From positions 31,474,775 through 31,538,774 of the forward strand of contig NC_069004.1 of the NCBI RefSeq assembly GCF_001194135.2: 64,000 nt of DNA, given 5' to 3'. How positions within the stretch are numbered: the stretch's first letter is position 1; each line of letters starts with the position of its first letter. This DNA is from Octopus bimaculoides. Its lineage: Eukaryota. The notes below the pieces were generated by a model. The model was not told where the DNA came from. It ran no database searches and saw nothing but the letters and a program-made list of their open reading frames with translations. Positions 26,203 through 63,993 of the stretch are shown piece by piece. A program made the translations under genes and the position numbers.

Positions 26203-28307
26203 ATATATATGTATATATGCTATAACGGAAGATACTTGCCTCAAGGTGCTGCACAATGGAGCTGAACTCAGAACTACAAAATCGGAGAGTGAACTTCTTA
26301 AAGACATAACAATGCCCGTTCTTAATTACTCTCTAACGATCAATTACAGACTTCTGTGTCCAAGCCTAAAACCAATCACCGAGACTTGTTAGTTTGGTTG
26401 TGTTACTTAAAGAACAACATTCTATTCTATTCTGTTCGTCTCCACAATATCACGTTTGTTCTCTGTGTCTGTGTCTCTCTTCAGGTCGGTACCTCCAATG
26501 TGATGGTCAGTGCATATGAAAAGGCACTCAGTGAATTCGAAGAAGATGAAAACATCATGGAAGAATTGGTCTCCATCCGATATGAAAAAGTCTGCAGAGT
26601 TGTGTGAGTCTAAGAATGTTATTTTCCACTTCTGTTTTTTTTTTTACCATTGTGTGTGTGTGTGAGGGGGTTGTACATGTATGTTATCTTAATCCTTTAA
26701 TTGTTTCTGTCATTGGACTGTGGCCATGCTGGGGCACCACCTTGAAAGGTTTTAGTCAAATGATTCAACCCTAATACTTTGATATATATATATATCATCA
26801 TCATCATCATCGTTTAACATCCGCTTTCCNNNNNNNNNNNNNNNNNNNNNNNNNNNNNNNNNNNNNNNNNNNNNNNNNNNNNNNNNNNNNNNNNNNNNNN
26901 NNNNNNNNNNNNNNNNNNNNNNNNNNNNNNNNNNNNNNNNNNNNNNNNNNNNNNNNNNNNNNNNNNNNNNNNNNNNNNNNNNNNNNNNNNNNNNNNNNNN
27001 NNNNNNNNNNNNNNNNNNNNNNNNNNNNNNNNNNNNNNNNNNNNNNNNNNNNNNNNNNNNNNNNNNNNNNNNNNNNNNNNNNNNNNNNNNNNNNNNNNNN
27101 NNNNNNNNNNNNNNNNNNNNNNNNNNNNNNNNNNNNNNNNNNNNNNNNNNNNNNNNNNNNNNNNNNNNNNNNNNNNNNNNNNNNNNNNNNNNNNNNNNNN
27201 NNNNNNNNNNNNNNNNNNNNNNNNNNNNNNNNNNNNNNNNNNNNNNNNNNNNNNNNNNNNNNNNNNNNNNNNNNNNNNNNNNNNNNNNNNNNNNNNNNNN
27301 NNNNNNNNNNNNNNNNNNNNNNNNNNNNNNNNNNNNNNNNNNNNNNNNNNNNNNNNNNNNNNNNNNNNNNNNNNNNNNNNNNNNNNNNNNNNNNNNNNNN
27401 NNNNNNNNNNNNNNNNNNNNNNNNNNNNNNNNNNNNNNNNNNNNNNNNNNNNNNNNNNNNNNNNNNNNNNNNNNNNNNNNNNNNNNNNNNNNNNNNNNNN
27501 NNNNNNNNNNNNNNNNNNNNNNNNNNNNCTCTCTCTCTCTCTCTCTACACACGCACGCGCATCACTGTGTGGTAAGGAAGTTTGCTTCCCAACTGTATGG
27601 TTCCAAGGTCTGTTCCACTGCAATGCACCTTCTACTCTCACTAACCAAACAAAGCCTTCTGAGTGGAATTGGCAGATGGGAAATCATTCTTTCTTTCTTT
27701 TTAATTATGTTGGTGCCAATAATTTTGAACCAATGCTTGAAGTTTTTATTGGCCGAGATTACCAAATTATTTAATCATTGTCTGATGTCCTCCTCCTCCT
27801 CCTCATCATCATCGTTTAACGTCCGTTTTCTATGCTGGCATGGGTTGGATGGCTTCACTGACGTCTGGAGAGCCAGTGGACTGCACCAGCCTCCAATCTG
27901 ATCCGGCAATGTTTCTACAGCTGGATGCCCTTCCTAATGCCAACCACTCTGAGAGTGTAGTCCTCCTTTGGCAAAATTTATGCTTTAGTTGTTCACATTA
28001 TTGTGACATAAGAGCATTTTCGTAGACATTTAATTTTAGCGAGAAATTCAATAAAAACTCGTTTTTGACAAGGTGGAAGGGTGCAATAATTGTGTGTATG
28101 ACTCTTGGTCATTGTTTAACGTCCATTTTCCATCCTAGCATGGGCTGGATGGTTTGACAGGAGTTGCACCCAGCTTGGTATTTCCTGGGGCTAAATAGCA
28201 GTAGCATTCTTCCCTTTCCTGGGACTGCCACATTAAGTTGGCAACATACCATCACTTTATCGTGCTACTACTGTATAAGTCTCTCTCAGAGATTTAGAAA
28301 TGCAATA

Positions 28308-32467: not shown

Positions 32468-34196
32468 TAAGGTGTGTGATGTTAGGAACGGCATCCAGCT
32501 GTAGTCTGGTGTAGTCTTCTACCCAGCCGGCTCCTGTAAACCTGTCAAACCATCCAACCCATGCCAGCATGGAAGGTGGACTTTAAATGATTAGCAGTAT
32601 TTTGTCTGCCGCTACGTTCTGAGTTCAAATTCCGCTGAGGTCGACTTTGCCTTTCATCCTTTCAGGATCGATTAAATAAGTACCAGTTCTGCACTGGGGT
32701 CGATGTAATCGACTTAATCCCTTTGTCTGTCCTTGTTTGTCCCCCTCTATGTTTAGCCCCCTGTGGGCAATAAAGAAATAGATATATAATATAAACAAAA
32801 CATCATAAATAGGAAGAATGGAGAATTAAACCTCTTCAAATAGGTTACATGTTGTTATTGTTTTTGTTGAATAAAATTTATTGAAAAAAAGCCACAATAA
32901 TTATACACCAACCCAATATATATATATATACATATATATACACACACACACACACACACATACAGTTTTTGACACCTACAGCTGTGCAGTGTAACTCTCT
33001 TTGAGAGCATAAATATGACTTTCCAGTTGTATATTTATACTCTCTCTCTCTCTCACTCTCTCTCTCACTCTCTCTCTCTCTCTCTCTCTCATATAGGTTT
33101 ATTAGTATCTATGTATATGTACATCTATTGCAGTATATTAATCTCTACTTTTTTTTCTCTCTCTCTCTCATTCCAGTTGTACAACCAAGCGATGGACCTG
33201 TGTATGCAGATGTACGGCGAGTATCACATTCTGACTTCAAGACTTTACATCAATATTGGGATCGTCTACGAAGACAATAAGGAATATCGGAAAGCATACG
33301 AGTACTTCAAGAAGTGGGCGAGGGTCAGCGAAGAGATTCTGGGACCTGACCATCCGAAAACACGCCGAGCAAAGGGTGTCCTCCAGGAGACACGGTACAG
33401 AAGGATCGCACAGGAGCTTGGTGAATGGGACTACGACGGGGACACAGATGGTGGCGAGTCCTATGACGACGACGACGACGAAGATGATGAAATGGAAAAC
33501 CCCGACCTCGAGCACTACTACGACGACGCCATCAGCCGGCAAACAGACAGTCATCGCAACCAGTACAGGCTAGCAGCGGCAGCAGCGGCTGCAGCAGCTG
33601 TGGTGGTGGACAATACGGAAATTGAAGCAATGGAGGACAGTGTCGAAAGAGCAGAGCTGGATAACAGGGCGGACAACACCGTCGGAAGTAATTCCGAAGA
33701 TGATGACGACGATGATGACAGTGACCATGGGAACTTTGAGTATGTCGTCGGACAGGAAAGGCCCGCAACGCGCAGATATTTCAGCAACAACAGCAGTAGC
33801 AGCGTCAGTGGATTGGACAGTAACAATCAGCATCATCATCATATTGACCGCAACAACCGAAGACACTCGTTCGATTATGCGTTTGATCTGGACGATGATG
33901 ACGACTCCGACCGAGAGCACTCGGACAACGAGAATTTCTTTGACGACAACTGCGAGGACTATGATGAGCAGTACACGCTTCTCGTTGACCATATTCCTGC
34001 CATTGAAGAGGTCAGTGTCCGGCTTGACCGGCAAGCTGACCAGTGTGGTGGTGACGTCACCCCATCGGCTGTGGTCAGTGAATTCATCGACGATAACAGA
34101 TATGCTGACGATGACACCGAGCAGGACACTGACTTTAGTGACATTGTTTGTCCGGAGAGTTACATATCTGGTCATTTCCAGGATGGTGTAAGATAA
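16114..34196 (+). CDS. Multi-exon STAND/NACHT-like P-loop NTPase with C-terminal TPR-like repeats (TEP1/NPHP3/DUF4062-NACHT-TPR-like architecture), 5'-partial, at least ~1010 aa
   Basis: Exons read with AG/GT boundaries: 16114-16209, 16803-16958, 17490-17623, 18998-19109, 19813-19923, 21069-21242, 22036-22229, 23056-23225, 23505-23676, 23996-24107, 24594-24722, 26485-26603, [phase break], 29373-29489, 30973-31116, 31960-32040, 33177-34196. Phases are consistent except across 26603/29373. Walker A GGAGSGKS, motif WHVFYHFVGAVPGST, Walker B LIMFVDALNQ, winged-helix-like ENPLWLAVACEEL, and KLC-type TPR ...LYINIGIVY...EILGPDHPKT are all present. Confidence 0.88.
17490..17623 (+). CDS. Exon of the NTPase-TPR gene carrying the Walker A (P-loop)
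   Basis: ccaaccag|ATTGAAG...GAAAAG|gtaagc; IEEYIVQEKRDVPLILVGGAGSGKSSVLCKAAALISKKASEDLK. Absent from the ORF track (short, no ATG). Confidence 0.9.
20515..20900. repeat. Pyrimidine-rich ~21-24-bp degenerate minisatellite
   Basis: Recurring ctcctcctccc(a/g)cc(c)(a/g)gtcgc; source of the spurious Pro/Ser/Arg-rich ORFs at 20385-21029. Confidence 0.85.
21383..21960. repeat. Degenerate ~40-bp minisatellite (about 14 copies) in an NTPase-TPR intron
   Basis: Recurring gacactatgttgaggcagttaaccctac core. Confidence 0.9.
22224..22405 (+). repeat. Three to four diverged ~50-60-bp tandem copies beginning at an exon donor site
   Basis: ctc(a/g)agtaa(g/a)t.gcattac.ttatt.tc with GT at 22230, 22279 and 22340, plus a partial copy at ~22382. 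Confidence 0.85.
24940..25095. mobile_element. Penelope-like 3' remnant repeat (related copy ~8890-9010; another candidate ~37850-38100)
   Basis: Shared sequence gaagagc.ta....gaaac.t.aaagact.ttc..tattcccgagcgtcaaactaataca; family assignment is tentative. Confidence 0.35.
26830..27528. other. Assembly gap (N-run) at the position where an NTPase-TPR exon appears to be missing; other large gaps at 4514-5202, 17907-18604, 25205-26090, 34586-35469, 41287-41782
   Basis: N-runs are directly visible; exon phases do not match across 26603 and 29373. Confidence 0.9.
29590..29930 (-). mobile_element. RTE-type LINE 3' end relic (intron of the NTPase-TPR gene)
   Basis: - strand reads ISEKIRRRCWACIGYVF...KTTWRRTIDKE...GWRSWNQ...NRTDWRDCAVALCAS, the typical RTE C-terminus. 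Confidence 0.7.
33177..34196 (+). CDS. Probable terminal exon of the NTPase-TPR gene: TPR-like repeats followed by an Asp/Glu-rich low-complexity tail
   Basis: ctcattccag|TTGTAC acceptor; 339 aa open frame, GC- and CpG-richer than the flanks; LYNQAMDLCMQMYGEYHILTSRLYINIGIVYEDNKEYRKAYEYFKKWARVSEEILGPDHPKT, then poly-D, poly-A and poly-H runs. Confidence 0.85.
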   Translation: MYNQAMDLCMQMYGEYHILTSRLYINIGIVYEDNKEYRKAYEYFKKWARVSEEILGPDHPKTRRAKGVLQETRYRRIAQELGEWDYDGDTDGGESYDDDDDEDDEMENPDLEHYYDDAISRQTDSHRNQYRLAAAAAAAAAVVVDNTEIEAMEDSVERAELDNRADNTVGSNSEDDDDDDDSDHGNFEYVVGQERPATRRYFSNNSSSSVSGLDSNNQHHHHIDRNNRRHSFDYAFDLDDDDDSDREHSDNENFFDDNCEDYDEQYTLLVDHIPAIEEVSVRLDRQADQCGGDVTPSAVVSEFIDDNRYADDDTEQDTDFSDIVCPESYISGHFQDGVR

Positions 34197-39563: not shown

Positions 39564-42013
39564 AAAGGGTAACCAGAATGAAAGCGAAAGAAGTGATGCA
39601 CTACCACTTCAGGCAATGCCAAAGTTTTACCTGTGTTACGTTTCAGGTGTGTTAAAAGATTTAACTTAAAAACGCTCAGAACTTTCTGGACAACCTAATA
39701 AATAATTCCTTAATTAAATGAAGTCACTTGTATTTTGAATAGATGAACAAACGCCTTATTGAAATAACAAAATTATTTTCAAAGCAAAAAAAAATTTTAT
39801 TCAACCAAGAAAAAACAAAGCAAACAGAAATTACAAATTAAAAATTTAAAAAAAAACAGAAAATTGAAGAAATTGTTTTAAAACTAAATGATTTAAGTTT
39901 TGTGGTCAAAACAAAGTTTTTGGAATCTGAAGAATTCTAACATTTGAACATGGAGCATTTTTTTTATCATTGATTATCAAGAATTTCAACTTCAAAAACA
40001 CAAAAATATTTTCAAAAAATTTTTTTTCCCTTACAAATTCTCTCCTCCACAGATATTTATAAACTTGTGAATGGTTTCTTCAACTCCATCCAAACTAGCT
40101 GTGAATAGGAACCATAATTTGGGGATAACAGTAAGCAGCAGTAGCTGTGTCTAATTGAAGAATTGCTTCATTAACCAAGTTTGGAGTTTAATTTGTCCAG
40201 TAAGAACAGATTGTATCTCTCTCTTTCTCTTTCTAGGTATGGCTGTGTGGTAAGAAGCTTGCTTCTCAACCACATGGTTCCGGGTTCAGTCCCACTACAT
40301 GGCACCTTGGGCAAGTGTCTTCTACTGTAAGCCTCAGGCTAGAAAAAGCCTTGAATGGATTTGGTAGATGGAAACTGAAAGAATCCTGTCGTGTGTTCGT
40401 GTCTGTCCACCACCACTTGACAACTGGTGTTGGTGTGTTTATATCCCTGTAAACTGATAGAACAAGTACCAGGCTTTAAAAAGTAGTGGGGTCAACGAGT
40501 GACTAAAATTCCTCAAGACGGTGCCCCAGCATGGCCACAGTTTAATGACTGAAACAAGTAACGGTATATATTCTTCTCTGGCACTGTCGGTTACTATTAC
40601 AAGAGTTCCAGCCTGCTTATGGAATTAATGTGCAAGTGGCTGAGTACTCCACAGACAGGTATCCTTAAAGCAGTTAGTGCAACATACAGGTACATCTCAC
40701 ATTTCACTTATAGCCCCTCTTTATTCTGTGAACCTTATCCGAGTATATGTTTTCTACACAGAACATATCTTGCCTATTTATATGCCGTGGCACTCCGCCA
40801 GTTACGAGAACGAGGGTTCCAGTTGATCGGATTAATGGAACAGCCTGCTTATGAAATTAACATGCAAGTGGCTGAGCACTCCACAGACACGTGTACCCTT
40901 AACGTAGTTCTCGGGGGAGATTCAGCATCACACAGAGTGTGACGAGGCTGGCCCCTTTGAAATACAGGTACAATAGAAACAGGAAGAAAGAGTGAGAGAA
41001 AGTTGTGGTGAAAGAGTACAGCAGGGTTCGCCACCATGCCCTGCCGGAGCCTTGTGGAGTTTTAGGTGTTTTCGCTCAACAAACACTCACAACGTCCGGT
41101 CTGGGAATCGAAACCACGATATATTCATGTTGATATATTCATGAATAAGTCACTAACCAAAATAAGTGGATCTATTGTTTAGGAAAATACTATTTACTTG
41201 TTTACGGGTTTTACTGGACAAATTGCGAAAATAAGTTCAAATCCTAAGAAATAAGCATACTCAATTTGATTGATACTAAATGATTTNNNNNNNNNNNNNN
41301 NNNNNNNNNNNNNNNNNNNNNNNNNNNNNNNNNNNNNNNNNNNNNNNNNNNNNNNNNNNNNNNNNNNNNNNNNNNNNNNNNNNNNNNNNNNNNNNNNNNN
41401 NNNNNNNNNNNNNNNNNNNNNNNNNNNNNNNNNNNNNNNNNNNNNNNNNNNNNNNNNNNNNNNNNNNNNNNNNNNNNNNNNNNNNNNNNNNNNNNNNNNN
41501 NNNNNNNNNNNNNNNNNNNNNNNNNNNNNNNNNNNNNNNNNNNNNNNNNNNNNNNNNNNNNNNNNNNNNNNNNNNNNNNNNNNNNNNNNNNNNNNNNNNN
41601 NNNNNNNNNNNNNNNNNNNNNNNNNNNNNNNNNNNNNNNNNNNNNNNNNNNNNNNNNNNNNNNNNNNNNNNNNNNNNNNNNNNNNNNNNNNNNNNNNNNN
41701 NNNNNNNNNNNNNNNNNNNNNNNNNNNNNNNNNNNNNNNNNNNNNNNNNNNNNNNNNNNNNNNNNNNNNNNNNNNNNNNNNNGGCGGGCCGACACCAGTA
41801 AAGATCAAGGAAGGTCAAAGGGTAGATTTAGGGAAGAAGGTAGATAAGGGGGTGGGAGGGATTTGAGCAATGGTGGGAGAGTAGGTGGATACCAAAGTAG
41901 GGGAGAGCCCCCCCCCCATACATATTCTGGATAGTAATGTATGATATAGTAGACAAAGGAAAGAAATTTAACAGTGGTTCATCAAACACACACATATCTC
42001 TAGAACATGTTTC

Positions 42014-44009
42014 TTATTTCGTGGTGTCAGCAGCAAGCTTGCAGGATTTCAAGGGATTGTCCGCAGACTTGAAAGACAGGTTTTCCGGAATTTGCACTTT
42101 GTTCGCATTGGAAGGCACAGAGTTGTCACAGAACTTCTGCGGCCAGGAATTAACGGGATAATTAAAAGTGTTCCAGAATAATGAAGGTCGGTTGTAATTA
42201 CCGAACCCTAGATTTTGTGGCGCGCGGGCCAACTGGTAGCCATTACTCGGGTAAATGTAGGAAGGACTGTATTCTGAATTTGCCACTCCATTCGTGGCCA
42301 CCTGCGCTGGAGTATAATACATAGTGTTATTGGCAGAAGTAGTAGAGGTGGCGGTGGTGGTGGTGGTAGTAGTACTACTACTACTATTACTGCTGCTGCT
42401 ACTACTACTAATGTTACTATTGCTGCTGTGTACGTCAGACATCTTGCTGGAAGTGGCAGCAGGATAGTTGGAAATGGCGAAGGATGTCTTCGGGGTGTAG
42501 TAGCCAAAGTCTGGCTGAGGCGAAGAAGAATAGATATGACTGGGTGGTGGTGGCTGGGTGGAAGACATCTGCAGGTTCAAAGGCAGGTTAACGCTTGGTA
42601 CCGATTGATTCCCACTGATCTGTTGGACAACGGGGTAGGTGTTTGGTGATGGCATGAAAGAATCTGAAATGGTAAGATGAACAAAAAAAAAAAAAATTAT
42701 AACGAAATCTACCAGAGGAATAAAGGCATCAACAACTAATTATTTCCCCTGGCAATTAATCTCACCCTTAGAGAGCTTGGTTCCTTTATTTTACATCCAT
42801 TTTTTCCAATCTTTCATAAACGGGTTAATTTTTTCTTTTTCTTTATATATATATGTGTGTGTGTGTGTGTGTGGAGGAGTGTGGCCTAATGGTTAGGGTG
42901 TCAGCATCATGATCGTAAGATTGTGGTTTCGATTCCTGGNNNNNNNNNNNNNNNNNNNNNNNNNNNNNNNNNNNNNNNNNNNNNNNNNNNNNNNNNNNNN
43001 NNNNNNNNNNNNNNNNNNNNNNNNNNNNNNNNNNNNNNNNNNNNNNNNNNNNNNNNNNNNNNNACGTTGCTCCAGTCCACTCAGCTGGCAAAAATGATTA
43101 ACGCTGCGATGGACTGGGGAACACATACGCCATTGAAACCAGGCCCATGATCCTGGCTAGGCTTTAAAAGGGTGCGTTTTTATATATATATATTAGTCAG
43201 GAAGGAAAGCAATGCCCACAGCCCTTTGTAGGGGCCTCCAAGACTGGAGAAAGGGGAAGAATGGAAAGAGAGAGGGAAAGTGACAGGAGAGAAGGGGGTA
43301 GAAAGTGGGAGAGGGAGTACCAGACAGATGGAAGAGTATTGTAGAAAATGAAGGAGAGTATATTTTAGATTGAAAAAGAACTTTATCTTAATTTTCAAAA
43401 ATAAAAGTATTAAAAAAAAACACTTATGGGATGATCCAATATATATCTCCCCACACATAATACACATAGTCCATTCAAAATGCCAAGAGCATTAACCATA
43501 ATGTCAACAGATAAATATAGAAAGAAATAAACATTTAACTCCCCACGTCTTTCACAGAACCAACACTACACCATACACTCACAGAATCCACAATGTCAAC
43601 AAATACACACACACACCGCTGCCTACACTCACACTTTCCTTCTACCTCTCATACATTCTTATTCTTACTCAAGTCTATATAAATATTGAACCAAACAAAA
43701 GATAGACAGAGAGGGCATCGTTGAAGTCATGAATGGCAACAAAGGGACTTTGACAAACCTAGCTGATTGACTGAACAGAACCTGTGCATGTGTTTATTAT
43801 TGGCATAATGACCCTACCAAGATACAAAAAAATGTTTCAACCCATAAGTTAACACAGATAATTTTGCAAACCAAACACAAAAATTTCTATATCTATATAT
43901 ATAGAGAATGGATATAATAACAATGGGAAACTCGTGGTTTTCGCTGGTATGTCTTTAAATTAAATAGATAACAAAGGAGGAAGAAGCAGAGATAAGAGAA
44001 GCATTTACA

Positions 44010-44041
<32 letters not shown>

Positions 44042-44051
44042 NNNNNNNNNN

Positions 44052-44087
<36 letters not shown>

Positions 44088-46055
44088 CTTCTTGACTTGG
44101 CTGACAAAGACGCTTGTGTATGAACAGATATACTCCATGGTAGTGAGACATGGGCTCTGACTGCAGAAGACATGCACAGACTGGAGAGAAATGAAGGCAG
44201 TATGCTCTGTTGGATGTGCAACATCAGTGCACATGTATGACAAAGTGCAAATGTATTGAGAGTAAAGTTGGGCATAAGAGGAATCAAATGTAGCATGCAA
44301 GAGAGAAGACTACGCTGGTTTGGACATGTGATGTGTATGAATGAGGACAACTGCATAAAGAAGTGCTAAGTGAAAATGGATGGTATCCATGGAAGAGGGG
44401 GAACCAGGAAGACATGGGATGAAGTGGTAGGGACCAATCTCAGGATGTTGGGCCTCACAGAACAAATGACAATGGACCAAAATGTCTTGCAATATGAGGT
44501 TCTTGAGAAAACCCGCCCACGTCAGTGAAACAGTTCTAGAAGCGCTGAATGTCCCCCACTCACACTTAACAAGAAAACTTCCCACAACAAACCAAACTAC
44601 ATCTCTTCCCTTCCTCGTCTTTCCACTTCGTGCACTATGCTTACCCCCCACTCCTTAATCCTGTCCTATTGGCAACTCTCATACCTTTTCCCAAGCAATG
44701 CGTGTGTGTGTTTATAGTATACGAGTGAGTGAACAAACAAAAGAAGGGCACTCGACCAATTTATTGGGAGTTACATGGAGGGATCAAAACAGTTCGATTC
44801 AAATTCCTTGATTCAAAATTCCTTAAAGTTTCAAAATTTAATACTTATCTTCAACCATTGGAAATTTGAATTTTAATATACACAGTAATCCCTCGACAAT
44901 TGTGGGTGTTATGTTCCAAAAACACCCTGTGATAGGTGAAAATCCGCAAATTAGAAACAGTACTGTATGATTTGTCTTTATAATTTTTATGATTTGTATA
45001 TATCTATTTTATTATAAATGCAAAACAACACCAGGGAGGAATCGCCGTAAGCTTAAATAATAAACCGCGATGGGTGAACCATGATATGGCAAGGGATTAC
45101 TCTGTGTATGTAAATTCAAATACACAAACAATTAAAATACAAAGAAAAAAGAAAAAAAGCAGACGCGAGGACATGTATAAGAAATATATTAATTTGACCC
45201 TTCGTGAAAGGAGAGAGTTAAGATTTTGAGCATAAGTTCTTCATCGGACACAGGAAAGCCCAAAGAGAAAGATGGAAAAATAAGGGGAAAAAAAAATCGC
45301 CAACAGTTCACATGCAGTTACATTTCTACACACACACACGAGAAGGTGCTTAAAAGTTCCTGGCTTTAAGGGTTGGAAACCAGGCCTCCAGAGTTCTTTT
45401 ATAGGGCTTAGAAAAAACTGAAGAACCATTGTGTGAATCTGAGAAGAGAATATGTTGAATAAAATTGTAATTAACTGATCGTCCTGTATTTTCTTTCACC
45501 CAAAGCCAGGAACTTTTCAGCACCCCCTCATACACACACACAGTTTACAGTTCCATTTTAGGTAGGATCAACAATAAAAGTACCCCACCCTGCAAGATAA
45601 ATATCATTTCATATACATAAATACAAAAGAGCCACTAAGGATTTCATGCTTTAAGATACAATAAATTGGAAGATTTGTGTAAGTTGCATTTATTTCCAAG
45701 CTTCAAATTATCAGCTCTTTCGTAATGTGTGTGTGTGTATATATACACACACATATATATACATATACGCATGCACACACACAATATATATACACACACA
45801 TAGATATATATATACACACACATATAGATATATACATACATGCACACGCACACATGTACATACATATATACATATATATATATATACACACACATATATA
45901 CAAATATATATATATACATATACACAAATATACATATACACATATACACAAATATACATATACACATATACACAAATATACATATACACAAATACATATA
46001 TATATCCAAATATACATATATACATATACACAAATACATATACACATATACACAA

Positions 46056-46094
<39 letters not shown>

Positions 46095-47596
46095 GGCACG
46101 TGGCCTAGTGGTTAGGCTGTGGTTAGACTCACAATCGCTTGATTGAGGGTTTGATTCCGACTGGGCAATGCCTTGTGTCCTTGAGCAAAACTCATCACTT
46201 TACATCGCTCCAGACCCCCTTTTGATCAGTGGGGAATGTTGTTGGCGTCATTTGAAGGCCAAAACAATACAAAAAGTGTATTGTGACCAGCGATGTGTAA
46301 CAACACCTGATGGCCTGGTCAATCACATGATATATATACATACATATATATGCATGCATGCATATGTACGTATGTATATATGTATGTACACCTTATTTAC
46401 CAAATTCACTCACAAGGCACAGGATGGCTCAGGATTCTAGTAAAAGACACTGTGGGGCACAGTGGGAATGAACCCAAAATCTTGTGGTTTCAAGTCAGGC
46501 TTCTTAACCACACAGCCATACCTGGCATGTACAGTAATAACCTCACTTTACGAGACCCCAAGTTTATGAGTTTTACTTTCAAGCACAACAAATGCTTCTG
46601 CATGTTACCAAGAGATTTATAGAGCAAAAGAAAGCTTCTTCTAAACAAATAACCCTAGACTTGTTTTTCAAAAAGAAATCTACAAGTCTGTCTAGGAGTG
46701 CTTGTGAATTGGTAATTGCTGGCCTTGTGCCAAAATTTGAAAGCAATATGATCAATACTGCTCGTAACCTGTCGCTACAGGTTATATATCATTAATATAA
46801 ACAAATTTGGAGCCTATGATGTCTAATATTACAGTAAATTTCCTTTATTTATCAAATCTTTATTAAATTCTTACGAATACAAATTGTTTCATAATAAACA
46901 AATGATCTCTGAACTTCTGATGAAATGGATCTCTGAACTTCTGATGAAATGGATCTACAAGATGAAATGGATCTACAAGATGAAATGGATCCACAAATGA
47001 TGATGTGCATGAGTCTAGTGTGAGTGAAAGGGATTCAGAAAACCGTTGTAATATTAGTATCTTTTATTATAAATAACCTCGACATTTTTACTTTACATAA
47101 AATATTCTTTAGATTCTGCTGTTGATTTATTACTATTTTTTTCTGATTACTATAAATTTTACAGGTAAAATATTTTTCTGGGAACAAATTACAATTTATA
47201 ACATGGCTACTATGGGTAATTATTGCTCTGCTTTACGAGTTTTCGCTTTACAAATTAATACGTATATTGAGGTATGTAATGAATAAATGAATAAATAAAT
47301 GTAATCTTACCTGCAGTGACGCAGTTAGAATAATCAGTCACCTGTTGGCAGAATTTTTCGCATCTTATGCAACCTTTGAAAATATCCTTGACGTTAATGT
47401 CGGGATGTCTTTGGAGCAGGATCTGTTGTCTGCTAATTCGGCGCCGTTCTTCTACCAAAATGCATTTCATACAATTACACAAGATGTAGGGGCAGCAACC
47501 TTTGTGGCCCTTCATCTTGGCATCAAAGCCATGATTTCTACAACGAGAACATTTCGGGTTCCGATATGAAGTTGGATAAACTTTTTTCCTGTTCAT
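42014..47596 (-). CDS. DMRT: DM-domain (doublesex/mab-3-related) transcription factor, 2 coding exons (47596-47311, 42663-42014), ~311 aa
   Basis: The first coding exon encodes RNPKCSRCRNHGFDAKMKGHKGCCPYILCNCMKCILVEERRRISRQQILLQR with all eight Zn ligands of the DM domain. Donor GCAG|gtaaga (phase 1) joins acceptor ccatttcag|ATTCTTTCATG (phase 1) in frame to a 215-aa P/S/T/N/Y-rich exon. An acceptor ttttttccag| at 47628 shows at least one upstream exon exists. The symbol is given at family level only. Confidence 0.92.
44085..44530 (+). mobile_element. RTE-type LINE 3' end relic (Dmrt intron)
   Basis: HGSETWALTAEDMHRLERNEGSMLCWMCNIS...LRVKLGIRGIKCSMQERRLRWFGHVMCMNEDNCIKKC...GRGGTRKTWDEVV, with internal stops. 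Confidence 0.85.
44883..45102. mobile_element. pogo/Tigger-like MITE
   Basis: Ends cagtaatccctcg ... aagggattact are inverted repeats with the CAGT terminus typical of Tigger elements. Confidence 0.6.
45339..45530 (+). mobile_element. Mariner internal-deletion derivative (second copy, opposite orientation, at ~62284-62495)
   Basis: TIRs cgagaaggtgcttaaaagttcctggcttt / aaagccaggaacttttcagcaccccctca|ta; interior reads FYRA*KKLKNHCVNLRREYVE*, like the mariner transposase C-terminus. Confidence 0.75.
45725..46090. repeat. Compound (TA/CA)n microsatellite; GATA/GA block at 5203-5400 and many shorter ones
   Basis: Directly visible. Confidence 0.95.
46529..46700 (+). mobile_element. Tigger-like relic
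   Basis: ta|cagtaataacctcactttacgag left end, followed by KKASSKQITLDLFFKK, resembling the KQxTLDxFF C-terminus of Tigger transposases. Confidence 0.5.
46904..46999. repeat. Nested short tandem repeats (24 bp x2, then 18 bp x2 plus a partial unit)
   Basis: gatctctgaacttctgatgaaatg at 46904 and 46928; gatctacaagatgaaatg at 46952 and 46970; gatccacaaatg at 46988. Confidence 0.9.
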
Positions 47597-47627
47597 GGTA
47601 AACGCTGTGTTAAAATGCTGGAAGTCT
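47311..47627 (-). CDS. DMRT: DM-domain exon of the Dmrt gene (first ATG at 47596; the upstream 31 nt are also open in frame)
   Basis: C-x2-C-x2-H ... H-x3-C-x4-C-x-C-x2-C pattern; flanked by a polypyrimidine acceptor and a GTAAG donor. Confidence 0.93.
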
Positions 47628-50039
47628 CTGGAAAAAACAACAAATAAATAATTCCATAATTAAACGAAAGTGTTAATGAAAGTTAAAGAAGTGATTTTAA
47701 ATTCCCAAACACAGGATAATGCTAATAATATAGCCTGAACAAGATAAGCTACCTCTGTTTTGTAAAAAAAAGTGTGGGCGGCCAGCCATGAGACTCGAAC
47801 TCACACCTCCGTGATTATTTAATGCGAGGGAACACAGAAAATCAAATTGGGAAGAATTAAGGAGCAAAAAAAAAAACCCTGTCAGTCAATGACTACAATA
47901 ATTATTTTTGCACTAGGCGCAAGGCCTGGAAAATTTGGAGGGGAAGGGGGCCAATCGATTATACTGACCCCGATGCGTAACTAGTACTTATAAACGTGGT
48001 CGATGGTGCCATCCCTAAACAAGTGCGTTTCCTGATTTTATTTCGTAACTTTCAGAAAAATGAATATTTTAAAATTAAACTTTCTACAAATACCTTTCAC
48101 ATGGTGCAGATTACGTTTATATTGGAATTAAAATGTGACGAAAATATATATATATATATATATATATATTTGGCGCACACATTATATACTGACACACATC
48201 ACACATCTACAAAATGGAACTTGAAATTTATAAAAAAGTTAAATAAGTGATTTGCGTCAGTATGTGTGCGCGCCATTTTTTTTTCTTTCTTTTTCTGCAT
48301 TAGTCCGTTTATAATCGGAATTTACATCATCTGAAGTGAATTTAATATAAAGGATTTCATTAATAAATACCCATTTTTCTGAAAGTTATGAGGAAACAAA
48401 GTCGGAGGTGGTACCGTCGTTTGTGACGTATAAGATTCGAAGAGTGCTCCTTGTAAAGTTTATAGAAACTTAAATATCAAAGACAAGCAGAACCCAATGA
48501 AACTTAACTGACGTTTCATCTTATGGGTGAAGATTAAAACGAATGCAAATCTTAATTGCAAATAAAACTATCTTCACAATTAATAGGAAGACTAATTAAT
48601 CGATACCACCACCCAAGGCATTGTTAACCCCAGCCACTCCACCTAAAACATAAGTTTATTTATAACGCGCTTCTCTAAGACGATCTGACGATTCTTAACG
48701 TTATAGTGTTACTCGGGGGAGGGATGCTTAGCTACTATTTTTGGGAGTGACACAGGACTTTGGATTGGGGTACTGTAAGTAATAAGTGAATAAAACTTAC
48801 AATATAGTTTGGCAGACGTAAAGAAAGTGGACCTCACCACCACCACCCCCTTTCGCTTTTTGTCTTTTCTTTTTTTTTTTTTTTAAACAGAANNNNNNNN
48901 NNNNNNNNNNNNNNNNNNNNNNNNNNNNNNNNNNNNNNNNNNNNNNNNNNNNNNNNNNNNNNNNNNNNNNNNNNNNNNNNNNNNNNNNNNNNNNNNNNNN
49001 NNNNNNNNNNNNNNNNNNNNNNNNNNNNNNNNNNNNNNNNNNNNNNNNNNNNNNNNNNNNNNNNNNNNNNNNNNNNNNNNNNNNNNNNNNNNNNNNNNNN
49101 NNNNNNNNNNCACCTAAAGTTTTAATTAACATTTCTTTCGGATTATATATATTATCGAAGGTGCCGCGCTGCACGACCGAACCCGAAATCCTGTGATCGA
49201 AACAAGTGGTTACTCACACACACAAACAAACACAAATACAGTGACGTCAATTTATTTATATAGGTGTGTTTATATATAACTACGCTTTGCAATCACGTGG
49301 TTTCGAGTTCCATCTCACTGCGCGGCACCTTCGGCAATGGGGTCGATCAATGCTTTTACGAGGGAACTGAGTTAATTCAGTAGACGAAAACTGTGTGGAA
49401 GCCCATCGATTGTGTGTGCCACCTCCCCGCTTGACAACCGGTATTGGCTTGTTAATGGCAACCAATCGTTTCGAGTCTCAGAATTGCCATTGACTTGTCA
49501 AGATTCGTTCGTTGGTTTCCGTGTGCCGTGACAGCACGTGTTGTCAACCGACGGCGATCTCGTTTTCTTCTTGGAAATTTACGGATTTTACAAATACACG
49601 CACGGAAACTAACTAAAACCCTTCATGGTGATGTCCCTGGATGATCGCAACCCACAGAAACAATATAAGGAAGATAAAAGGTGTGTGTGTGTACACACAC
49701 CTTATCCACACATGGTTGGGTGCACGTGGGACAGAAAAACGTCGAGAAACATAAAAATAACTGCTTGGCTGACTTCAAACATCGTTCAAAGATCTTATTA
49801 TACCTTGTGATTGTCTTCAGTTAAATATATTTTTAAGGGTTAATGTTGACATTATTATCCCTAAACGAAATCGCAAAAAAAAAAATAGTGCAACGGGTGT
49901 TAAAAAAAATGTGTAGGAAACGAATGTGAGAACAAAAATGCCCTGAAAGTGCAGCATTGACAGCAAAACATCTGTGGAGTAAATGATGGGCTAATTCGAC
50001 TAAGCAACATGCTATGCGTCCGTTTGGAGTATTTCAGGT

Positions 50040-59278: not shown

Positions 59279-61732
59279 TTTGGCGAAAGTTCGTTGGCGC
59301 ATGAGGGAATCAACTTTGGAGTTGTAGAAATCAAAGACAAACTGTGCCATCTGAGCCATGTCTTCCATCACAACAACTTTACCGTAAGCCAGTTCTGTGA
59401 CCTGTCATTGGAAATAACAACAACAACAACAATGAACATTTAATAACTTGGAAAAACAACAACAGGTAAGATAAAAGCCGCTCAAATATCAGGTGTTAAT
59501 CTGACCAGGTGAGAGGACAAATGGCATGAATATGAGATTGTGACAAGCTATGGGCAGTGCATTCCCTTTCTTAGATCTCCTCCTCCTCATCATCATCATT
59601 ATTTAATGTCCACTTCTCCATGCTTGCATGGGTCAGTCAGAATTTGTCCACACAGGTTTTCTATGGCTGGATGCCCTTCCTGTCATCAACCCTCATTTGA
59701 TTTACAATCATCAAGTGATGTCTAAACAAGAGAGCACACAAATACACACACCAGTATATACATAAACACACAACATTATACACACATACAATGGGCTTCT
59801 TTCGGTTTCCATCTACCAAATCTACTCACAAGGCTTTGGTTTACCTGGAGCTATAGTACAAGACACTTGCTCAAGGTACCATGCAGTGGGACTGAACCAA
59901 AGACCATATGATTAGGAAGCAAGCTTTGCAACCACACAGCCATACCTGTACTTATTTAATTTAAATGAAGGGCAGAGTCCCTCTTTCTCAGATTTATTTA
60001 GTTAAAACGAAGGTACAGGGTCACTAGTCCTTCATTTTAACTGAAAAGATTGTAAAAATATGTCTTGCGAAAACATGGGCTATTCTCAATGGCCAATGTC
60101 ATCTGGAAGTCATCACTACCCAGTGTTTAAAAGTACCTTCTTCCATGCCACTGTAGAATCTGTGATGCTTAACAGGACTGCTGCCTGGACATTTATGAAA
60201 CCTCTTGTGGGAAAAAGCATTTGACAAACCACATGCTGTATGGCAGCAATTAATTAATTTATTAATTTTGCAATTAATAAATTATATTAACTCTTCACCT
60301 CCATTTTCTGAATTTTAATTTGAATATTTATAAAACAAGATTTATACTTAAACCTATTATTTTATGAATATTACTATTTATAAAGAAAAATACGTAATGA
60401 ACCAGTAATTCATTGGGTATTTTTATCCCTTAATGAGGCTATTTTAACCGCTATTTAAATTTATGTGTGTGTGTGTGTGGTGCTACTCTGGTAGCGGTNN
60501 NNNNNNNNNNNNNNNNNNNNNNNNNNNNNNNNNNNNNNNNNNNNNNNNNNNNNNNNNNNNNNNNNNNNNNNNNNNNNNNNNNNNNNNNNNNNNNNNNNNN
60601 NNNNNGATGGTGATGCTCCTCGCAAACTACTCACCTTCCGTACTGGAGGGTAGATTTCTGTTGGTGTCAGGTGCAGATTAATTGGTCGACTCGTTAGCTG
60701 CAAAATAGAAGGGAGATAAAGCATGTTAACGTCCGGCAAGGGCCAGAATGGTAACGAATATATTTAGGGGGGAGGACAATAAATTGTAAAAGGTGGTGGT
60801 GGTGGTGGGTTAAAAAATTTTTTTTTTATATAGTTCCCTTCTAGAGTCTTACCGACTCATAAGTGTTTCGCTCAAAAACACAATGCGTTGCCCAGTCCGG
60901 GAATCGAAACCACGATCTCATGATCATGAGTCCAACACCCTAACCACTAAGCCACGCACCTCCACGGTAGTGGTGGTGAATGCTAATACAACCTCTCACC
61001 TGGCACATGGCCACTTCTCTTGGTTCCTCTCCCTCTCTCAGCTGAGATGCTCTTGTTTTGCAAGATACTTGAGAACCCTGCAGGTGCTGGCGCCGCATAA
61101 AAATCACCCATGCTGGCATCACATAGAAAGCACCCATGCTGGTGCCATGTAAAAGACACTCATACTGGCACCCTGTCAAAAGCACATGTGACGGTGCCAT
61201 GTCAAAAACACCTGTGTTGGCGCCACACAGAAAGCACTCATGTTAATTTCATAGAAAAAGCACCCAGCTTGGTGTCATGTAAAAATTACCCAGTACACTG
61301 AGTGTTAGGGAGTGGTTGGTGTTAGGAAGGGCATCCAGCCTTAGAAACCTTGCCAAAACAGACAAATGGAGCCTGGTGCAGCCATTCGGCTTGCAAGTTC
61401 CTGGCAAACCTTCCAACCCATGCCAGCATGGAAAATGGATGATATATGATGATGACGATAACGATGGTATGAAAGCATGTATATACATACATATAAATGT
61501 ATGTTTAAGCACACAAACACACACACACACATGCATGCAGGCGCACACATACAAAGTGTTGAAGGGAAGCTCGTAGCAACTAACCTTATTAAACGCTGGA
61601 GTTAGTTCGAAACAGTTGCGGAAGAGGGAGACACGTGCAAAAACGTATAATCCCAGACGTGCACGGGACAATGCAACAATAAGACGCCGCACATCGCTGC
61701 AAAACAGAAACGCACATTATTAATAGTGTCAG

Positions 61733-61769
<37 letters not shown>

Positions 61770-63584
61770 AGTGGTGATTGTGATGATGGCGGTGGTGGTG
61801 ATGGTGATAAAGAAGATGAAGTTGATGTGGTGGTGGAGATGGTGGTGATGATGATAAAGAGATAAACATGTGAAGAAAAACAATCGAAACTCACCGCAGA
61901 TGTCCCACAGCTTTCGTTCTGACAAGAGATAATAAGATGTAGTCGTTTTGTTGACCCTGGTAACGATCAACTGTTGTCACCTAAACAACAACAACATCAA
62001 CAATCAGAAAAATGAAATATATTCCAGATAAATTATTCCCACATCCACACACACAGACTATAAAAGTATAGAGGCATGTCTTTCTCTCACTTTCCCTCCT
62101 ACGTGCTATCAATCTCATCACTCTCTCATATCTGCCATTGAGGGCCTCCTCCTCACTACATCAGTCCTTACATATCTCTGACATCCATCTCTGTCACTGT
62201 ACATATATCTCTCTCTTTCTTTCTTTTGCCTCCCCACTCTCCCAAAATTTCCCATCCTAGTATGCAACACACACACACACACATGAGGGGGGGGGGGCTG
62301 AAAAGTTTCTGGCTTTGTGTAAAAGAAAATACAAGAGGAGCAGTTAATTATGATTTTATTCAACCTCAGATTCACACATTCATTGCAAGCGGTCCTTCAG
62401 TTTTTCAAAGTCCTGTATAAGAACCTGAAGGTTGGGCCTCCAACAGAACCCTTCACGATACCCTTAAAGCTAGGAACTTTTCATCACCCACCTCATATAC
62501 ATTCTTTTATTTGTTTCAGTAATTTGACTGCGGCCATGCTGGAGCATCGCCTTTAGTTGAACAAATCAACCCCAAGACTTATTCTTTGTAAGCCTCGTAC
62601 TTATTCTATCAGGGCTCTTTTGCCAAACTGCTAAGTTACAGGGACATAAACACACCAGCATCGGTTGTCAAGTGATGGTGGGGGGACAGGGAACAAACAC
62701 AGATACACAAACATACACACACACATACAACGGGCTTCTTTCAGTTTCAGTCTACCAAATCCACTCACAAGGCTTTGGTCGGCCTGAGGATATAGTAGAG
62801 GACACTTGCCCAAGGTGCCACACAGTGGAACTGAACCTAGAACCATGTGTATATCCCCCAGGGTCAATAAAATCAAATCATGTGTTTACCTTGTGGGGTC
62901 GTCCAATGAAAGGATTGTTGCCACATCTCTGGGCTATGACGTCACGGATCAAGTGTTTCTGACCGTTATAGGTGGTCAGTATGGAGATCTTCTCAGCTGG
63001 GTAACCTAGTAACCTCATGTACATAAACACAGCCACGGTATACTCAGCCTCTGCCAGGTTCTATGATGACAAGACAGAGAAAGAAAGGATTAAATGTAAA
63101 TAATAAAAAAATTAAAAATTGAAATAAAAATAAAATGTCTGCTTCTAAAATTGTGCATTTTCTATAAATTTATGATAACATAATGGTAAACCAATGCCTA
63201 GCAGTCCATGTAAATCTAAATATGTCCAAAATTCCTGTCAAGTATGAAACAGAATTTCTCCTCTGATTTGGTTTTATCATTATGGACATTTGGATAATTT
63301 ATGGAGTGTATTTGGGAAAAGGTACACCCACAAAATTCCTGGAAGAGTTGGCATTCCAGGAAAAATATCTGACCAAGAGCAATGCCTCAGAAATCCTGAC
63401 CAACCCATACCAGCATGGAAAAACTGATGTAAAATGATGACGGCAATGGTAGTGGTGGTGATTGAGATGAGGATGAGGATGATGGTGATGGTGGTGGTGA
63501 TGGTGATGGTGGTGGTGGTGGTGATGACGACACTGATGATGATGATAATGATGACGGTGGTAATAACGACGCTGATGCTGGAGG

Positions 63585-63615
<31 letters not shown>

Positions 63616-63993
63616 GGTGGTGATAATGATGGTGATGGTGATAATGGTGGTGGTGGTGATGATGACTGATGATGATGGTGATAGTGATGACGATGGTGGT
63701 GGTGATGATAATGATGGTGATGGTGATAATGGTGGTGGTGGCGATGACGACGCTGATGATGATGATGGTGATAGTGATGACGACGGTGGTGGTGATGATC
63801 ACCTGAAACATCTACTCTCACCTGATAGAAAAATGGGTTCGGCTCTGATTCGCCGACACCGTTGAAGTCTTGTACATCGACAAGCTGGTAGTCGTAGACA
63901 AATCCTGCGTTGGCCATTTGGAACTCTGGTGAAACCAAAACATGAGGCAGATTGCCAAGTTTGCGGTACCTCCAGTTATACAGGTTACTCAAG
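59279..63993 (-). CDS. AQR: Intron-binding protein Aquarius (SF1 spliceosomal RNA helicase), 3' exons; gene continues beyond the window end
   Basis: Phase-consistent exons 63993-63822, 63060-62890, 61980-61895, 61696-61585, 60697-60635, 59401-59279 give [18 protein letters not shown]...[134 protein letters not shown], the recognisable AQR C-terminal helicase region. The terminal exon and stop are not resolved. Confidence 0.95.
60055..60250 (+). mobile_element. Short RTE-like LINE relic (AQR intron)
   Basis: [19 protein letters not shown] resembles the RTE motif FFRATVESVLLYGSETWT. Confidence 0.5.

What the first reader, a model, noticed from the sequence alone, without database searches (positions are those of the whole stretch)
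42014..47627. Divergent DM-domain gene: candidate cephalopod Dmrt1-like sex-differentiation factor with an altered recognition helix
Seen: all Zn ligands are intact, but the usually near-invariant helix ERQRVMAAQVALRR reads ERRRISRQQILLQR and HKRxC reads HKGCC. The second exon is P/S/T/N/Y-rich with no recognisable DMA domain. Established: in human DMRT1, R72, R111, V119 and R123 contact DNA. By my alignment these are R, R, I and R here, while M115 (same helix face) becomes S and R122 becomes Q. Dmrt2/3/4/5 orthologues keep this helix almost unchanged, whereas fast-evolving, DMA-less, testis-biased Dmrt1-like genes are known in bivalves, and a ZZ/Z0 system has been reported in octopus. Inference: this may be the octopus member of that fast-evolving lineage, possibly with shifted DNA or partner specificity.
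Basis: partly seen in the sequence, partly recalled or inferred. Interest (0 to 1): 0.75.

Follow-up and report, generated by a model that had tools for sequence, protein, structure and literature searches.

The report
Octopus fast-evolving DM-domain (Dmrt-1L) gene
This is an intact two-exon Octopus bimaculoides gene for a doublesex/mab-3-type DNA-binding protein with an unusual DNA-reading helix; its O. sinensis counterparts were already catalogued in 2025 as the mollusc 'Dmrt-1L' type, so it is a real but largely known candidate male-differentiation factor.

Summary
On the minus strand, exon 47311-47596 encodes a DM domain (Pfam E=2.8e-17) with all eight Zn ligands and the helix ERRRISRQQILLQRH. 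It splices in frame (CAG|GTAAG to TTTCAG|) to exon 42014-42663, which is 58% P/S/T/N/Y and has no DMA domain. Both assembly gaps lie in the intron. The conceptual 311-aa product is 100% identical to an annotated O. bimaculoides protein, misnamed 'putative protein TPRXL'.

O. vulgaris and O. sinensis each carry two intact copies with the same structure and gap-free introns. Whole-gene dN/dS is about 0.24 (p<1e-6), so the gene is constrained. The DM domain evolves fast (about 0.37), and the helix differs between congeners (I to N at the V119-equivalent).

The O. sinensis orthologues XP_029647701.2 and XP_036366646.1 are listed as Dmrt-1L by Nicolini et al. 2025, by manual annotation. A 'Dmrt1' is testis-biased in O. 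sinensis, but its identity with this gene is inferred.

I could not test orthology to bivalve Dmrt-1L myself. In my limited tree the octopus clade has no supported sister. Z-linkage is unresolved, and indirect evidence argues against it.

Verdict: real, ordinary-to-moderately interesting, essentially already known.

The parts
47597..47627 (-). Probable 5'-UTR part of the DM exon, starting just after a strong acceptor (TTGTTGTTTTTTCCAG|AGAC; AG at 47628-47629)
   Evidence: Sequence. An in-frame stop lies 21 codons upstream of the ATG. The O. vulgaris model P0001 reads through the homologous acceptor from upstream exons, which suggests a non-coding upstream exon. Inferred.
47311..47596 (-). Coding exon 1: ATG at 47596, 286 nt, phase 1, covering aa 1-95 plus one base
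   Evidence: 87% aa identity to an intact ORF in O. vulgaris. Identical to annotated protein P0194.
47423..47563 (-). DM DNA-binding domain (aa 12-58 by Pfam) with the CCHC and HCCC zinc ligands
   Evidence: Pfam PF00751, E=2.8e-17. PDB 4YJ0 and 1LPV. AlphaFold pLDDT 82-94.
47408..47470 (-). Recognition helix (aa 43-63): KCILVEERRRISRQQILLQRH
   Evidence: Helix 43-63 in the model. Aligned to DMRT1 residues 105-124. Differs from congeners at four helix positions.
47321..47374 (-). Post-helix cysteine cluster GCIRCEKFCQQVTDYSNC (aa 75-92)
   Evidence: No non-synonymous change in aa 65-95 between O. bimaculoides and O. vulgaris. Identical in 4 of 5 gene copies. Low model confidence. Function unknown.
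47309..47310 (-). Splice donor GT (CAG|GTAAG)
   Evidence: The homologous donor is GTGAGA in four other loci.
42664..47310 (-). Single intron (4647 nt including 134 N), holding both assembly gaps, microsatellites and a repeat fragment
   Evidence: Orthologous introns of 7.3-10.1 kb contain no N.
42014..42663 (-). Coding exon 2 (acceptor TTTCAG|ATTC; stop TAA at 42014-42016): 215-aa S/T/P/N/Y-rich tail, predicted disordered, with conserved islands
   Evidence: 77% aa identity with only in-frame indels against O. vulgaris. pLDDT <50. No DMA domain.

Best explanation
This is a functional, two-coding-exon gene of Octopus bimaculoides. NCBI names it 'putative protein TPRXL' and UniProt 'DM domain-containing protein'. 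It encodes a 311-aa transcription factor of the DM (doublesex/mab-3) family and belongs to the group published as mollusc 'Dmrt-1L'.

Likely mechanism: the N-terminal zinc module (CCHC+HCCC) and the following alpha-helix bind DNA as in DMRT1 and Dsx, with the zinc module in the minor groove and the helix in the major groove. The key arginines (R72, R111 and R123 equivalents) are kept. The long disordered S/T/P/N/Y-rich tail, with a few strictly conserved islands, and the conserved Cys-rich segment after the helix presumably mediate partner or activation functions.

The gene is under purifying selection overall. Its DNA-reading helix changes unusually fast, even between congeneric octopuses. 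It most likely acts in male gonad differentiation or spermatogenesis rather than as the chromosomal sex switch.

Shown: gene structure, domain, ligands, conservation, constraint, orthology to the O. sinensis genes. Inferred: DNA binding, family orthology to bivalve Dmrt-1L, testis expression, sexual role.
For: - Domain and ligands.
- In-frame splice identical to annotated protein P0194.
- Five intact copies in three species with the same junctions and only in-frame indels.
- Whole-gene dN/dS 0.23-0.27, p<1e-6 against neutrality; exon 2 0.20; aa 65-95 has no non-synonymous change.
- DM domain modelled with pLDDT 82-94 and a continuous helix 43-63; tail below 50.
- O. sinensis orthologues XP_029647701.2 and XP_036366646.1 are listed as Dmrt-1L in PMC12530298 Table S6. 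That paper reports Dmrt-1L in Octopus and high sequence divergence of the family.
- No DMA domain.
- An O. sinensis gene annotated 'Dmrt1' with a DM domain is 87-fold testis-biased (PMC11202624). NCBI names the two O. sinensis orthologues 'DMRT1-like'.
- R111 is central to DMRT1 DNA binding (PMC9713387).
Against: - The Dmrt-1L label in the literature is a manual annotation (Possvm 'OG0/NA'), and monophyly is not recovered with outgroups.
- In my NJ tree of 69 DM domains the octopus clade (99.7% bootstrap) has no sister above 33%. The nearest non-octopus domains (58-60% identity) are unnamed marine metagenome proteins plus a scorpion, a chimaera and a coral protein. No mollusc Dmrt-1L could be shown to be closest.
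- DM-domain dN/dS of 0.35-0.39 is not significantly below 1 (p about 0.07-0.09).
- The link between EVM0011468 and this gene could not be made. It was not among the qPCR primer targets, and the supplements hold no cross-reference.
- DNA binding is untested, and M115S, R122Q and the I/N change at V119 lie in the recognition helix.
Confidence: 0.7

Rival explanations
1. It is a cephalopod-specific, fast-evolving offshoot of another Dmrt class (or an orphan long-branch DM gene), not a true orthologue of bivalve Dmrt-1L. On this view 'Dmrt-1L' is a catch-all for divergent DM genes.
For: Automatic orthology gave 'OG0/NA', and the family is monophyletic only in a mollusc-only tree. No supported sister in my tree. 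The best non-octopus matches form a taxonomic grab-bag at 52-60% identity. No squid, cuttlefish or nautilus orthologue appeared among the best 150 representatives.
Against: A published mollusc-only phylogeny groups the O. sinensis orthologues with Dmrt-1L. The gene shares the family's features: DM only, no DMA, high divergence. A DMA-bearing group was sister in only 1 of 300 bootstrap replicates.
Confidence: 0.22
2. It is a Z-linked, dosage-sensitive primary sex-determining gene, analogous to bird DMRT1.
For: Octopus has a ZZ/Z0 system. The carrying chromosome differs oddly in size between assemblies: 36.2, 55.4 and 73.6 Mb in O. bimaculoides, O. sinensis and O. vulgaris. That would fit a repeat-rich chromosome. 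I could not map the accessions CM046624.1, CM016876.1 and OX597833.1 to chromosome numbers.
Against: Coffing et al. searched their Z-linked proteins by BLASTP with a scallop DMRT1L and reported hits only for FOXL2 and ZNF226-like. Papers focused on the Z (O. vulgaris chr16, O. sinensis LG20) never mention a DM gene. A 36-Mb scaffold is unlikely to be the 16th or 17th largest of 30 in a 2.3-Gb assembly (inference). dS against O. sinensis is 0.24, above the autosomal mean of 0.123, whereas Z genes have reduced dS of 0.091.
Confidence: 0.05
3. It is a decaying or non-DNA-binding relic: a pseudogene or a gene under relaxed constraint.
For: DM-domain dN/dS is not significantly below 1. The helix departs from consensus. 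The O. vulgaris NCBI model P0001 lacks the zinc module.
Against: There are five intact ORFs in three species, all indels are in frame, and whole-gene dN/dS is 0.24 with p<1e-6. All Zn ligands and the R72, R111 and R123 equivalents are kept. The O. vulgaris genome has an intact DM exon at that locus, so P0001 is a modelling error.
Confidence: 0.03

Closest known systems
Mollusc Dmrt-1L (Patinopecten yessoensis DMRT1L; Crassostrea gigas XP_011441049.2; group defined in Li et al. 2018, Evensen et al. 2022, Nicolini et al. 2025)
   Same: Single DM domain, no DMA domain, high amino-acid divergence. The O. sinensis orthologues are explicitly placed in this group. Bivalve members are testis-biased, and an O. 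sinensis 'Dmrt1' is too.
   Different: Orthology is only manually assigned. The octopus gene has a conserved Cys-rich post-helix segment and a long S/T/P/N/Y tail, and I could not compare these with bivalve proteins. It is duplicated in O. vulgaris and O. sinensis.
Vertebrate DMRT1 (PDB 4YJ0)
   Same: Same DM fold by sequence (E=6e-14). All Zn ligands and the R72, R111 and R123 equivalents are conserved. Candidate male gonadal role.
   Different: About 50% identity in the DM domain. The helix changes Q112R, V114I, M115S, A116R, A117Q, A120L and R122Q. There is no Dmrt1 C-terminal domain (PF12374). Not orthologous according to PMC12530298.
Mammalian DMRTB1 and DMRTC2 (fast-evolving, DMA-less, germ-line DM genes)
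   Same: A DM domain followed by a low-complexity tail, no DMA, divergent helices. Domain identity is similar (51-54%).
   Different: No phylogenetic affinity (sister in at most 4 of 300 replicates). The DMRTC2 C-terminal domain (PF15791) is absent.
[quoted passage not shown]
   Same: DM domain.
   Different: Those classes keep ERQRVMAAQVALRR nearly unchanged, and most Dmrt-3 and Dmrt-4/5 (and some mollusc Dmrt-2) carry a DMA domain. Here the helix is altered and DMA is absent. O. bimaculoides has a separate Dmrt-2, XP_052832484.1.

Membership tests
DM-domain (Dmrt) transcription factors | DM domain matching Pfam PF00751 above the gathering threshold | tested here: met
   62.8 bits against a cut-off of 27, E=2.8e-17, full-length match to profile positions 1-47.
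DM-domain (Dmrt) transcription factors | Intertwined CCHC and HCCC zinc ligands with canonical spacing C-2-C-2-H-8-H-3-C-4-C-1-C-2-C | tested here: met
   C16, C19, H22, H31, C35, C40, C42 and C45 are present. Ungapped alignment to 4YJ0 and 1LPV. Invariant in all five octopus copies.
DM-domain (Dmrt) transcription factors | C-terminal recognition helix with the DNA-contacting arginines | tested here: met
   Helix 43-63 at pLDDT 86-94. R111 and R123 equivalents are present. The role of R111 comes from PMC9713387. The contacts of R72, V119 and R123 rest on my recollection of Murphy et al. 2015, which I could not open.
DM-domain (Dmrt) transcription factors | Sequence-specific DNA binding | not testable with these tools
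   Needs EMSA, SELEX or PBM.
Mollusc Dmrt-1L | Groups with bivalve and gastropod Dmrt-1L, and not with Dmrt-2, -3 or -4/5, in a DM-domain phylogeny | tested here: inconclusive
   My tree lacks labelled mollusc sequences. The octopus clade has no sister above 33%, and a DMA-class sister appeared in 1 of 300 replicates. The published mollusc-only tree includes the O. sinensis orthologues in Dmrt-1L, but by manual curation.
Mollusc Dmrt-1L | DM domain without a DMA (CUE-like) domain | tested here: met
   No PF03474 hit at E<=1 in either exon. Precomputed Pfam lists only PF00751 for P0194 and P0002.
Mollusc Dmrt-1L | High amino-acid sequence divergence relative to other Dmrt genes | tested here: met
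   12 of 95 residues differ in the DM exon between congeners. DM dN/dS is 0.35-0.39. Identity to any non-octopus DM domain is at most 60%.
Mollusc Dmrt-1L | Male- or testis-biased expression | not testable with these tools
   Indirect only: O. sinensis 'Dmrt1' EVM0011468 at 136 vs 1.56 FPKM. Its identity with this gene is not established.
Vertebrate DMRT1 orthology group | Dmrt1 C-terminal domain (PF12374) and grouping with vertebrate DMRT1 | tested here: not met
   No PF12374 hit. Never sister to vertebrate DMRT1 in 300 replicates.
Z-linked sex-determining locus | Located on the octopus Z (O. bimaculoides chr16/17, O. vulgaris chr16, O. sinensis LG20) | not testable with these tools
   The records are CM046624.1, OX597833.1 and CM016876.1. 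Accession-to-chromosome mapping was not found. Indirect evidence argues against.

The most novel reading that the evidence does not exclude
The DNA-reading helix of the octopus Dmrt-1L is diversifying between closely related species. O. bimaculoides has ERRRISRQQILLQRH, against ERRRINRQQNLLRRY in O. vulgaris and O. sinensis, with I to N at the base-contacting V119 position and Q to R at R122. The gene was also recently duplicated in the O. vulgaris/O. sinensis lineage. Together these would mean a rapidly re-tuning male-pathway regulator with a shifted binding site or altered binding stoichiometry, acting as the autosomal effector downstream of Z dosage.
Probability: 0.15. Interest if true: 0.6.

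Novelty: already known. Interest (0 to 1): 0.3.

Why it matters
Cephalopod sex determination was only recently shown to be chromosomal (ZZ/Z0), and no effector gene is known. A constrained, probably testis-biased DM gene with a fast-changing recognition helix is an obvious candidate for the male differentiation pathway.

It is also a tractable test case for how DM-domain specificity evolves. The gene and its family assignment are already in the literature, however.

What this analysis adds:
- the exact gene model, and proof that the gaps are harmless;
- correction of two misleading annotations ('TPRXL' in O. bimaculoides, and a model without the zinc module in O. vulgaris);
- the duplication in O. 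vulgaris and O. sinensis;
- quantified constraint;
- the between-species helix changes and a conserved Cys-rich segment.

Tried and rejected
- The first word-indexed homologue search with the DM exon returned a single, mis-modelled protein. The exhaustive phmmer search was needed.
- I tried to name the nearest non-octopus relatives. Most are unnamed ENA or Logan proteins, so no labelled mollusc Dmrt-1L, -2, -3 or -4/5 set could be assembled. The decisive phylogeny could not be run.
- A family of two-DM-domain proteins seemed to share the post-helix motif 'PDI..D(I/F)..CI..QQ(V/F)(T/V)DY'. Its only named member at that score level is from the midge Clunio marinus; more weakly matching wasp proteins are also named. 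The similarity outside the DM domain is not significant, with E>1. Rejected as chance.
- Foldseek of the AlphaFold model against the PDB gave no match. The likely reason is a small Zn-dependent domain inside a mostly disordered 311-residue model. The sequence match to 4YJ0 stands.
- I tried to link O. sinensis EVM0011468 to this gene through qPCR primers and supplements. Nothing was found.
- I tried to map the chromosome accessions to the Z through the literature and accession strings. Nothing was found.
- Murphy et al. 2015 (the DMRT1-DNA structure paper) could not be opened.
- No second DM domain exists in the window or in the O. vulgaris locus.
- The pseudogene reading was rejected.
Full report
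**Where the window comes from.** A 25.6-kb locus fetched for the annotated protein P0194 is 100% identical to the window. This places the window at Octopus bimaculoides CM046624.1 (GCA_001194135.2; 36,166,163 bp), positions 31,474,775-31,538,774. The many N runs fit that short-read-based assembly.

**The observation.**
- On the minus strand, the ORF 47255-47596 carries a full-length DM domain. Pfam PF00751 scores 62.8 bits against a cut-off of 27 (E=2.8e-17, aa 12-58).
- phmmer finds the two solved DM domains: human DMRT1 4YJ0 (E=6e-14) and Drosophila Dsx 1LPV (E=3e-10). Both alignments are ungapped.
- All eight zinc ligands are present. HKRFC reads HKGCC, and ERQRVMAAQVALRRQ reads ERRRISRQQILLQRH.
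- I anchored the numbering on R111, the arginine after 'IAE'. The R111G repair template in PMC9713387 shows this.
- That R111 is central to DNA binding comes from the same paper. The contacts of R72, V119 and R123 rest on my memory of Murphy et al. 2015, which I could not open.
- Only one DM domain exists in the window.

**Gene structure and the gaps.**
- Exon 1 CDS runs from 47596 down to 47311 (286 nt, phase 1) and ends at CAG|GTAAG.
- Exon 2 starts at 42663 after TTTCAG| and ends with TAA at 42014 (650 nt).
- The sum of 936 nt is in frame and gives 311 aa.
- Both flagged gaps (42940-43063 and 44042-44051) lie inside the 4647-nt intron.
- The conceptual protein is 100% identical over its whole length to database protein P0194. 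NCBI names it 'putative protein TPRXL [Octopus bimaculoides]' and UniRef 'DM domain-containing protein'. The NCBI name presumably reflects the serine/threonine-rich tail.
The O. vulgaris model reads through the homologous site from far-upstream exons. A non-coding upstream exon is therefore likely.

**Relatives in other octopuses.**
- An exhaustive phmmer search of 1.84 billion representatives gave one close hit, P0002 (295 aa, 88% identity over the DM exon). [quoted passage not shown]
- Its 90% cluster also holds XP_036366646.1 (O. sinensis) and CAI9737499.1 (O. vulgaris).
- Fetching the loci showed two copies in each species. In O. vulgaris they lie on OX597833.1 at about 23.55 and 23.74 Mb. 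In O. sinensis they lie on CM016876.1 at about 16.97 and 17.10 Mb.
- All four encode intact proteins of 295-297 aa. They share the same donor and acceptor, have single introns of 7.3-10.1 kb without any N, and differ from the O. bimaculoides gene only by substitutions and in-frame indels.
- The O. vulgaris NCBI model P0001 lacks the zinc module. The genome at that locus encodes an intact DM exon, so the model is an annotation artefact.
- Shared substitutions group the A copies together and the B copies together across the two species. Paralogue dS (0.016-0.027) is about the same as the between-species dS. The duplication is therefore roughly as old as the O. vulgaris/O. sinensis split, or the copies are homogenised by conversion. 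It postdates the split from O. bimaculoides.

**Selection (Nei-Gojobori estimates).**

| Comparison | dN/dS | Detail |
|---|---|---|
| O. bimaculoides vs each of the four copies, whole gene | 0.23-0.27 | about 40 synonymous and 40 non-synonymous differences; p<1e-6 vs neutrality |
| Exon 2 | 0.20 | |
| aa 65-95, including GCIRCEKFCQQVTDYSNC | 0 | no non-synonymous change |
| DM domain alone | 0.35-0.39 | 9-10 non-synonymous vs 6 synonymous; p about 0.07-0.09 |

Four of the DM-domain changes lie in or just after the recognition helix. O. bimaculoides reads ERRRISRQQILLQRH. Three of the four other copies read ERRRINRQQNLLRRY, and the fourth reads ERRRISRQQNLLRRY. The V119-equivalent is I in this window but N in the congeners. 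The R122-equivalent is Q here but R there. The extra Cys in HKGCC is F in the others. The gene is clearly functional, but its DNA-reading surface is labile.

**Structure.** AlphaFold2 with a 40-sequence alignment models aa 11-63 at pLDDT 82-94, with a continuous helix 43-63. The Cys-rich segment has low confidence, and the tail from about aa 87 is below 50, so it is predicted disordered. Foldseek against the PDB found nothing. I attribute this to a small metal-dependent domain in a mostly disordered model. The exon-2 residues are 57.7% P+S+T+N+Y and have no DMA or other Pfam domain.

**Family assignment.**
- Nicolini et al. 2025 (PMC12530298) list XP_029647701.2 and XP_036366646.1 as 'Dmrt-1L', together with XP_036368911.1 and O. 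bimaculoides XP_014782618.1. They state that Dmrt-1L is present in Octopus.
- The entries are flagged 'Possvm OG0/NA, manually annotated'. [quoted passage not shown]
- I could not repeat the test, because labelled mollusc sequences were not retrievable.
- The nearest non-octopus domains (58-60% identity, sharing KCILVEERRR) are unnamed marine metagenome proteins. Named neighbours come from a scorpion, a chimaera, a coral, a bedbug and Oikopleura.
- In an NJ tree of 69 DM domains with 300 bootstraps, the octopus clade has 99.7% support and no sister above 33%. A DMA-bearing group was sister once, and vertebrate DMRT1 never.
Positive orthology to bivalve Dmrt-1L rests on the literature.
- An apparent post-helix motif shared with a two-DM-domain family proved non-significant. 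That family's only named member at that score level is from a midge.

**Expression and sex linkage.**
- In O. sinensis gonads, a DM-domain gene annotated 'Dmrt1' (EVM0011468) has 136 FPKM in testis and 1.56 in ovary (PMC11202624). NCBI names the two orthologues 'DMRT1-like', so identity is plausible. I could not show it.
- The octopus Z is chr17 in Coffing's O. bimaculoides assembly, chr16 in the public assembly and in O. vulgaris, and LG20 in O. sinensis.
- I could not map CM046624.1, OX597833.1 or CM016876.1 to chromosome numbers.
- Four lines of indirect evidence argue against Z-linkage:
  - Coffing et al. searched their Z proteins with a scallop DMRT1L and reported hits only for FOXL2 and ZNF226-like.
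  - Z-focused papers do not mention any DM gene.
  - A 36-Mb scaffold is an unlikely 16th or 17th largest of 30 (inference).
  - dS against O. sinensis (0.24) exceeds the autosomal mean of 0.123, whereas Z genes show reduced dS of 0.091.
- I put Z-linkage at about 5% and flag it as the cheapest decisive check.

**Neighbours.** Upstream on the same strand are the last exons of the spliceosomal helicase Aquarius (PDB 4PJ3 and 5MQF, E=1e-14 to 1e-18). Downstream and convergent is an NPHP3-like NACHT/TPR gene, whose last exon is 33015-34196.

**Verdict.** However, the gene is annotated, and its orthologues are already published as octopus Dmrt-1L. What remains open, and moderately interesting, is whether the rapidly changing recognition helix alters DNA specificity, and whether the gene acts in the male pathway downstream of Z dosage.

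Noticed in passing
window 39913-41788: The block just downstream of the stop codon is inverted relative to all four O. vulgaris and O. sinensis loci. There, its homologue follows exon 2 directly, 4 nt away in the B copies. One breakpoint coincides with the edge of the assembly gap 41287-41782. This is either a local misassembly or a real 1.9-kb inversion in the 3'-UTR region. No AATAAA lies in the 230 nt between the stop codon and the gap.
   Followed up: partly
L001 (OX597833.1, about 23.74 Mb), L002 (about 23.55 Mb); L003 and L004 (CM016876.1, about 17.10 and 16.97 Mb): The gene is duplicated in O. vulgaris and O. sinensis, with copies 130-190 kb apart and all intact. Only one copy was found for O. 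bimaculoides. The two O. vulgaris copies are in opposite orientation, while the two O. sinensis copies are in the same orientation.
   Followed up: partly
window 42014-47596 (protein P0194); L001 10001-53770 (protein P0001): There are two annotation problems. The O. bimaculoides DM gene is named 'putative protein TPRXL'. One O. vulgaris model (162 aa) skips the zinc module and reads the 5'-UTR in another frame, although the genome encodes an intact DM exon.
   Followed up: yes
window 47321-47374 (aa 75-92): A cysteine cluster, GCIRCEKFCQQVTDYSNC (C-x2-C-x3-C-x9-C), follows the recognition helix. The cysteines and spacing are invariant in all five octopus copies, one of which has a single Q-to-L change. 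It was not seen in any other DM protein examined. It might be an extra metal site or a remnant of a second zinc module. AlphaFold confidence is low.
   Followed up: partly
window 61249-61692 and 63387-63992, minus strand: These are exons of the spliceosomal helicase Aquarius (AQR/IBP160), matching human residues about 1287-1321 and 1154-1199. One ORF runs on into a histidine-rich microsatellite-derived stretch.
   Followed up: yes
window 23048-23428 and 33015-34196, plus strand: These are exons of an NPHP3-like NACHT/TPR gene (annotated product 1075 aa). The last exon has TPR_12 repeats followed by a long acidic D/E-rich tail. The gene is convergent with the DM gene.
   Followed up: partly
window 44109-44496 (intron); also about 1113-1393, 15650-15811, 20131-20296, 27797-27961, 61271-61553: Interspersed repeat families are shared with several places in the O. 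vulgaris locus at 70-85% identity. By my recollection, the intronic one encodes a retrotransposon-like peptide tail (…GRGGTRKTWDEVV…). Long (TA)n and (CA)n microsatellites flank several gaps.
   Followed up: no
CM046624.1, CM016876.1 and OX597833.1: The chromosome carrying this gene measures 36.2 Mb in O. bimaculoides, 55.4 Mb in O. sinensis and 73.6 Mb in O. vulgaris. That spread is much larger than the genome-size ratio, which suggests a repeat-rich or poorly scaffolded chromosome.
   Followed up: no
protein P0233 (Logan assembly, 224 aa): An unnamed DM protein from a public read-set assembly shares the rare 'HKGCC' motif. It also has a very divergent helix and an S/T/N/Y/P-rich tail. It may be a distant relative, for instance from another mollusc, but its organism is unknown.
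   Followed up: no
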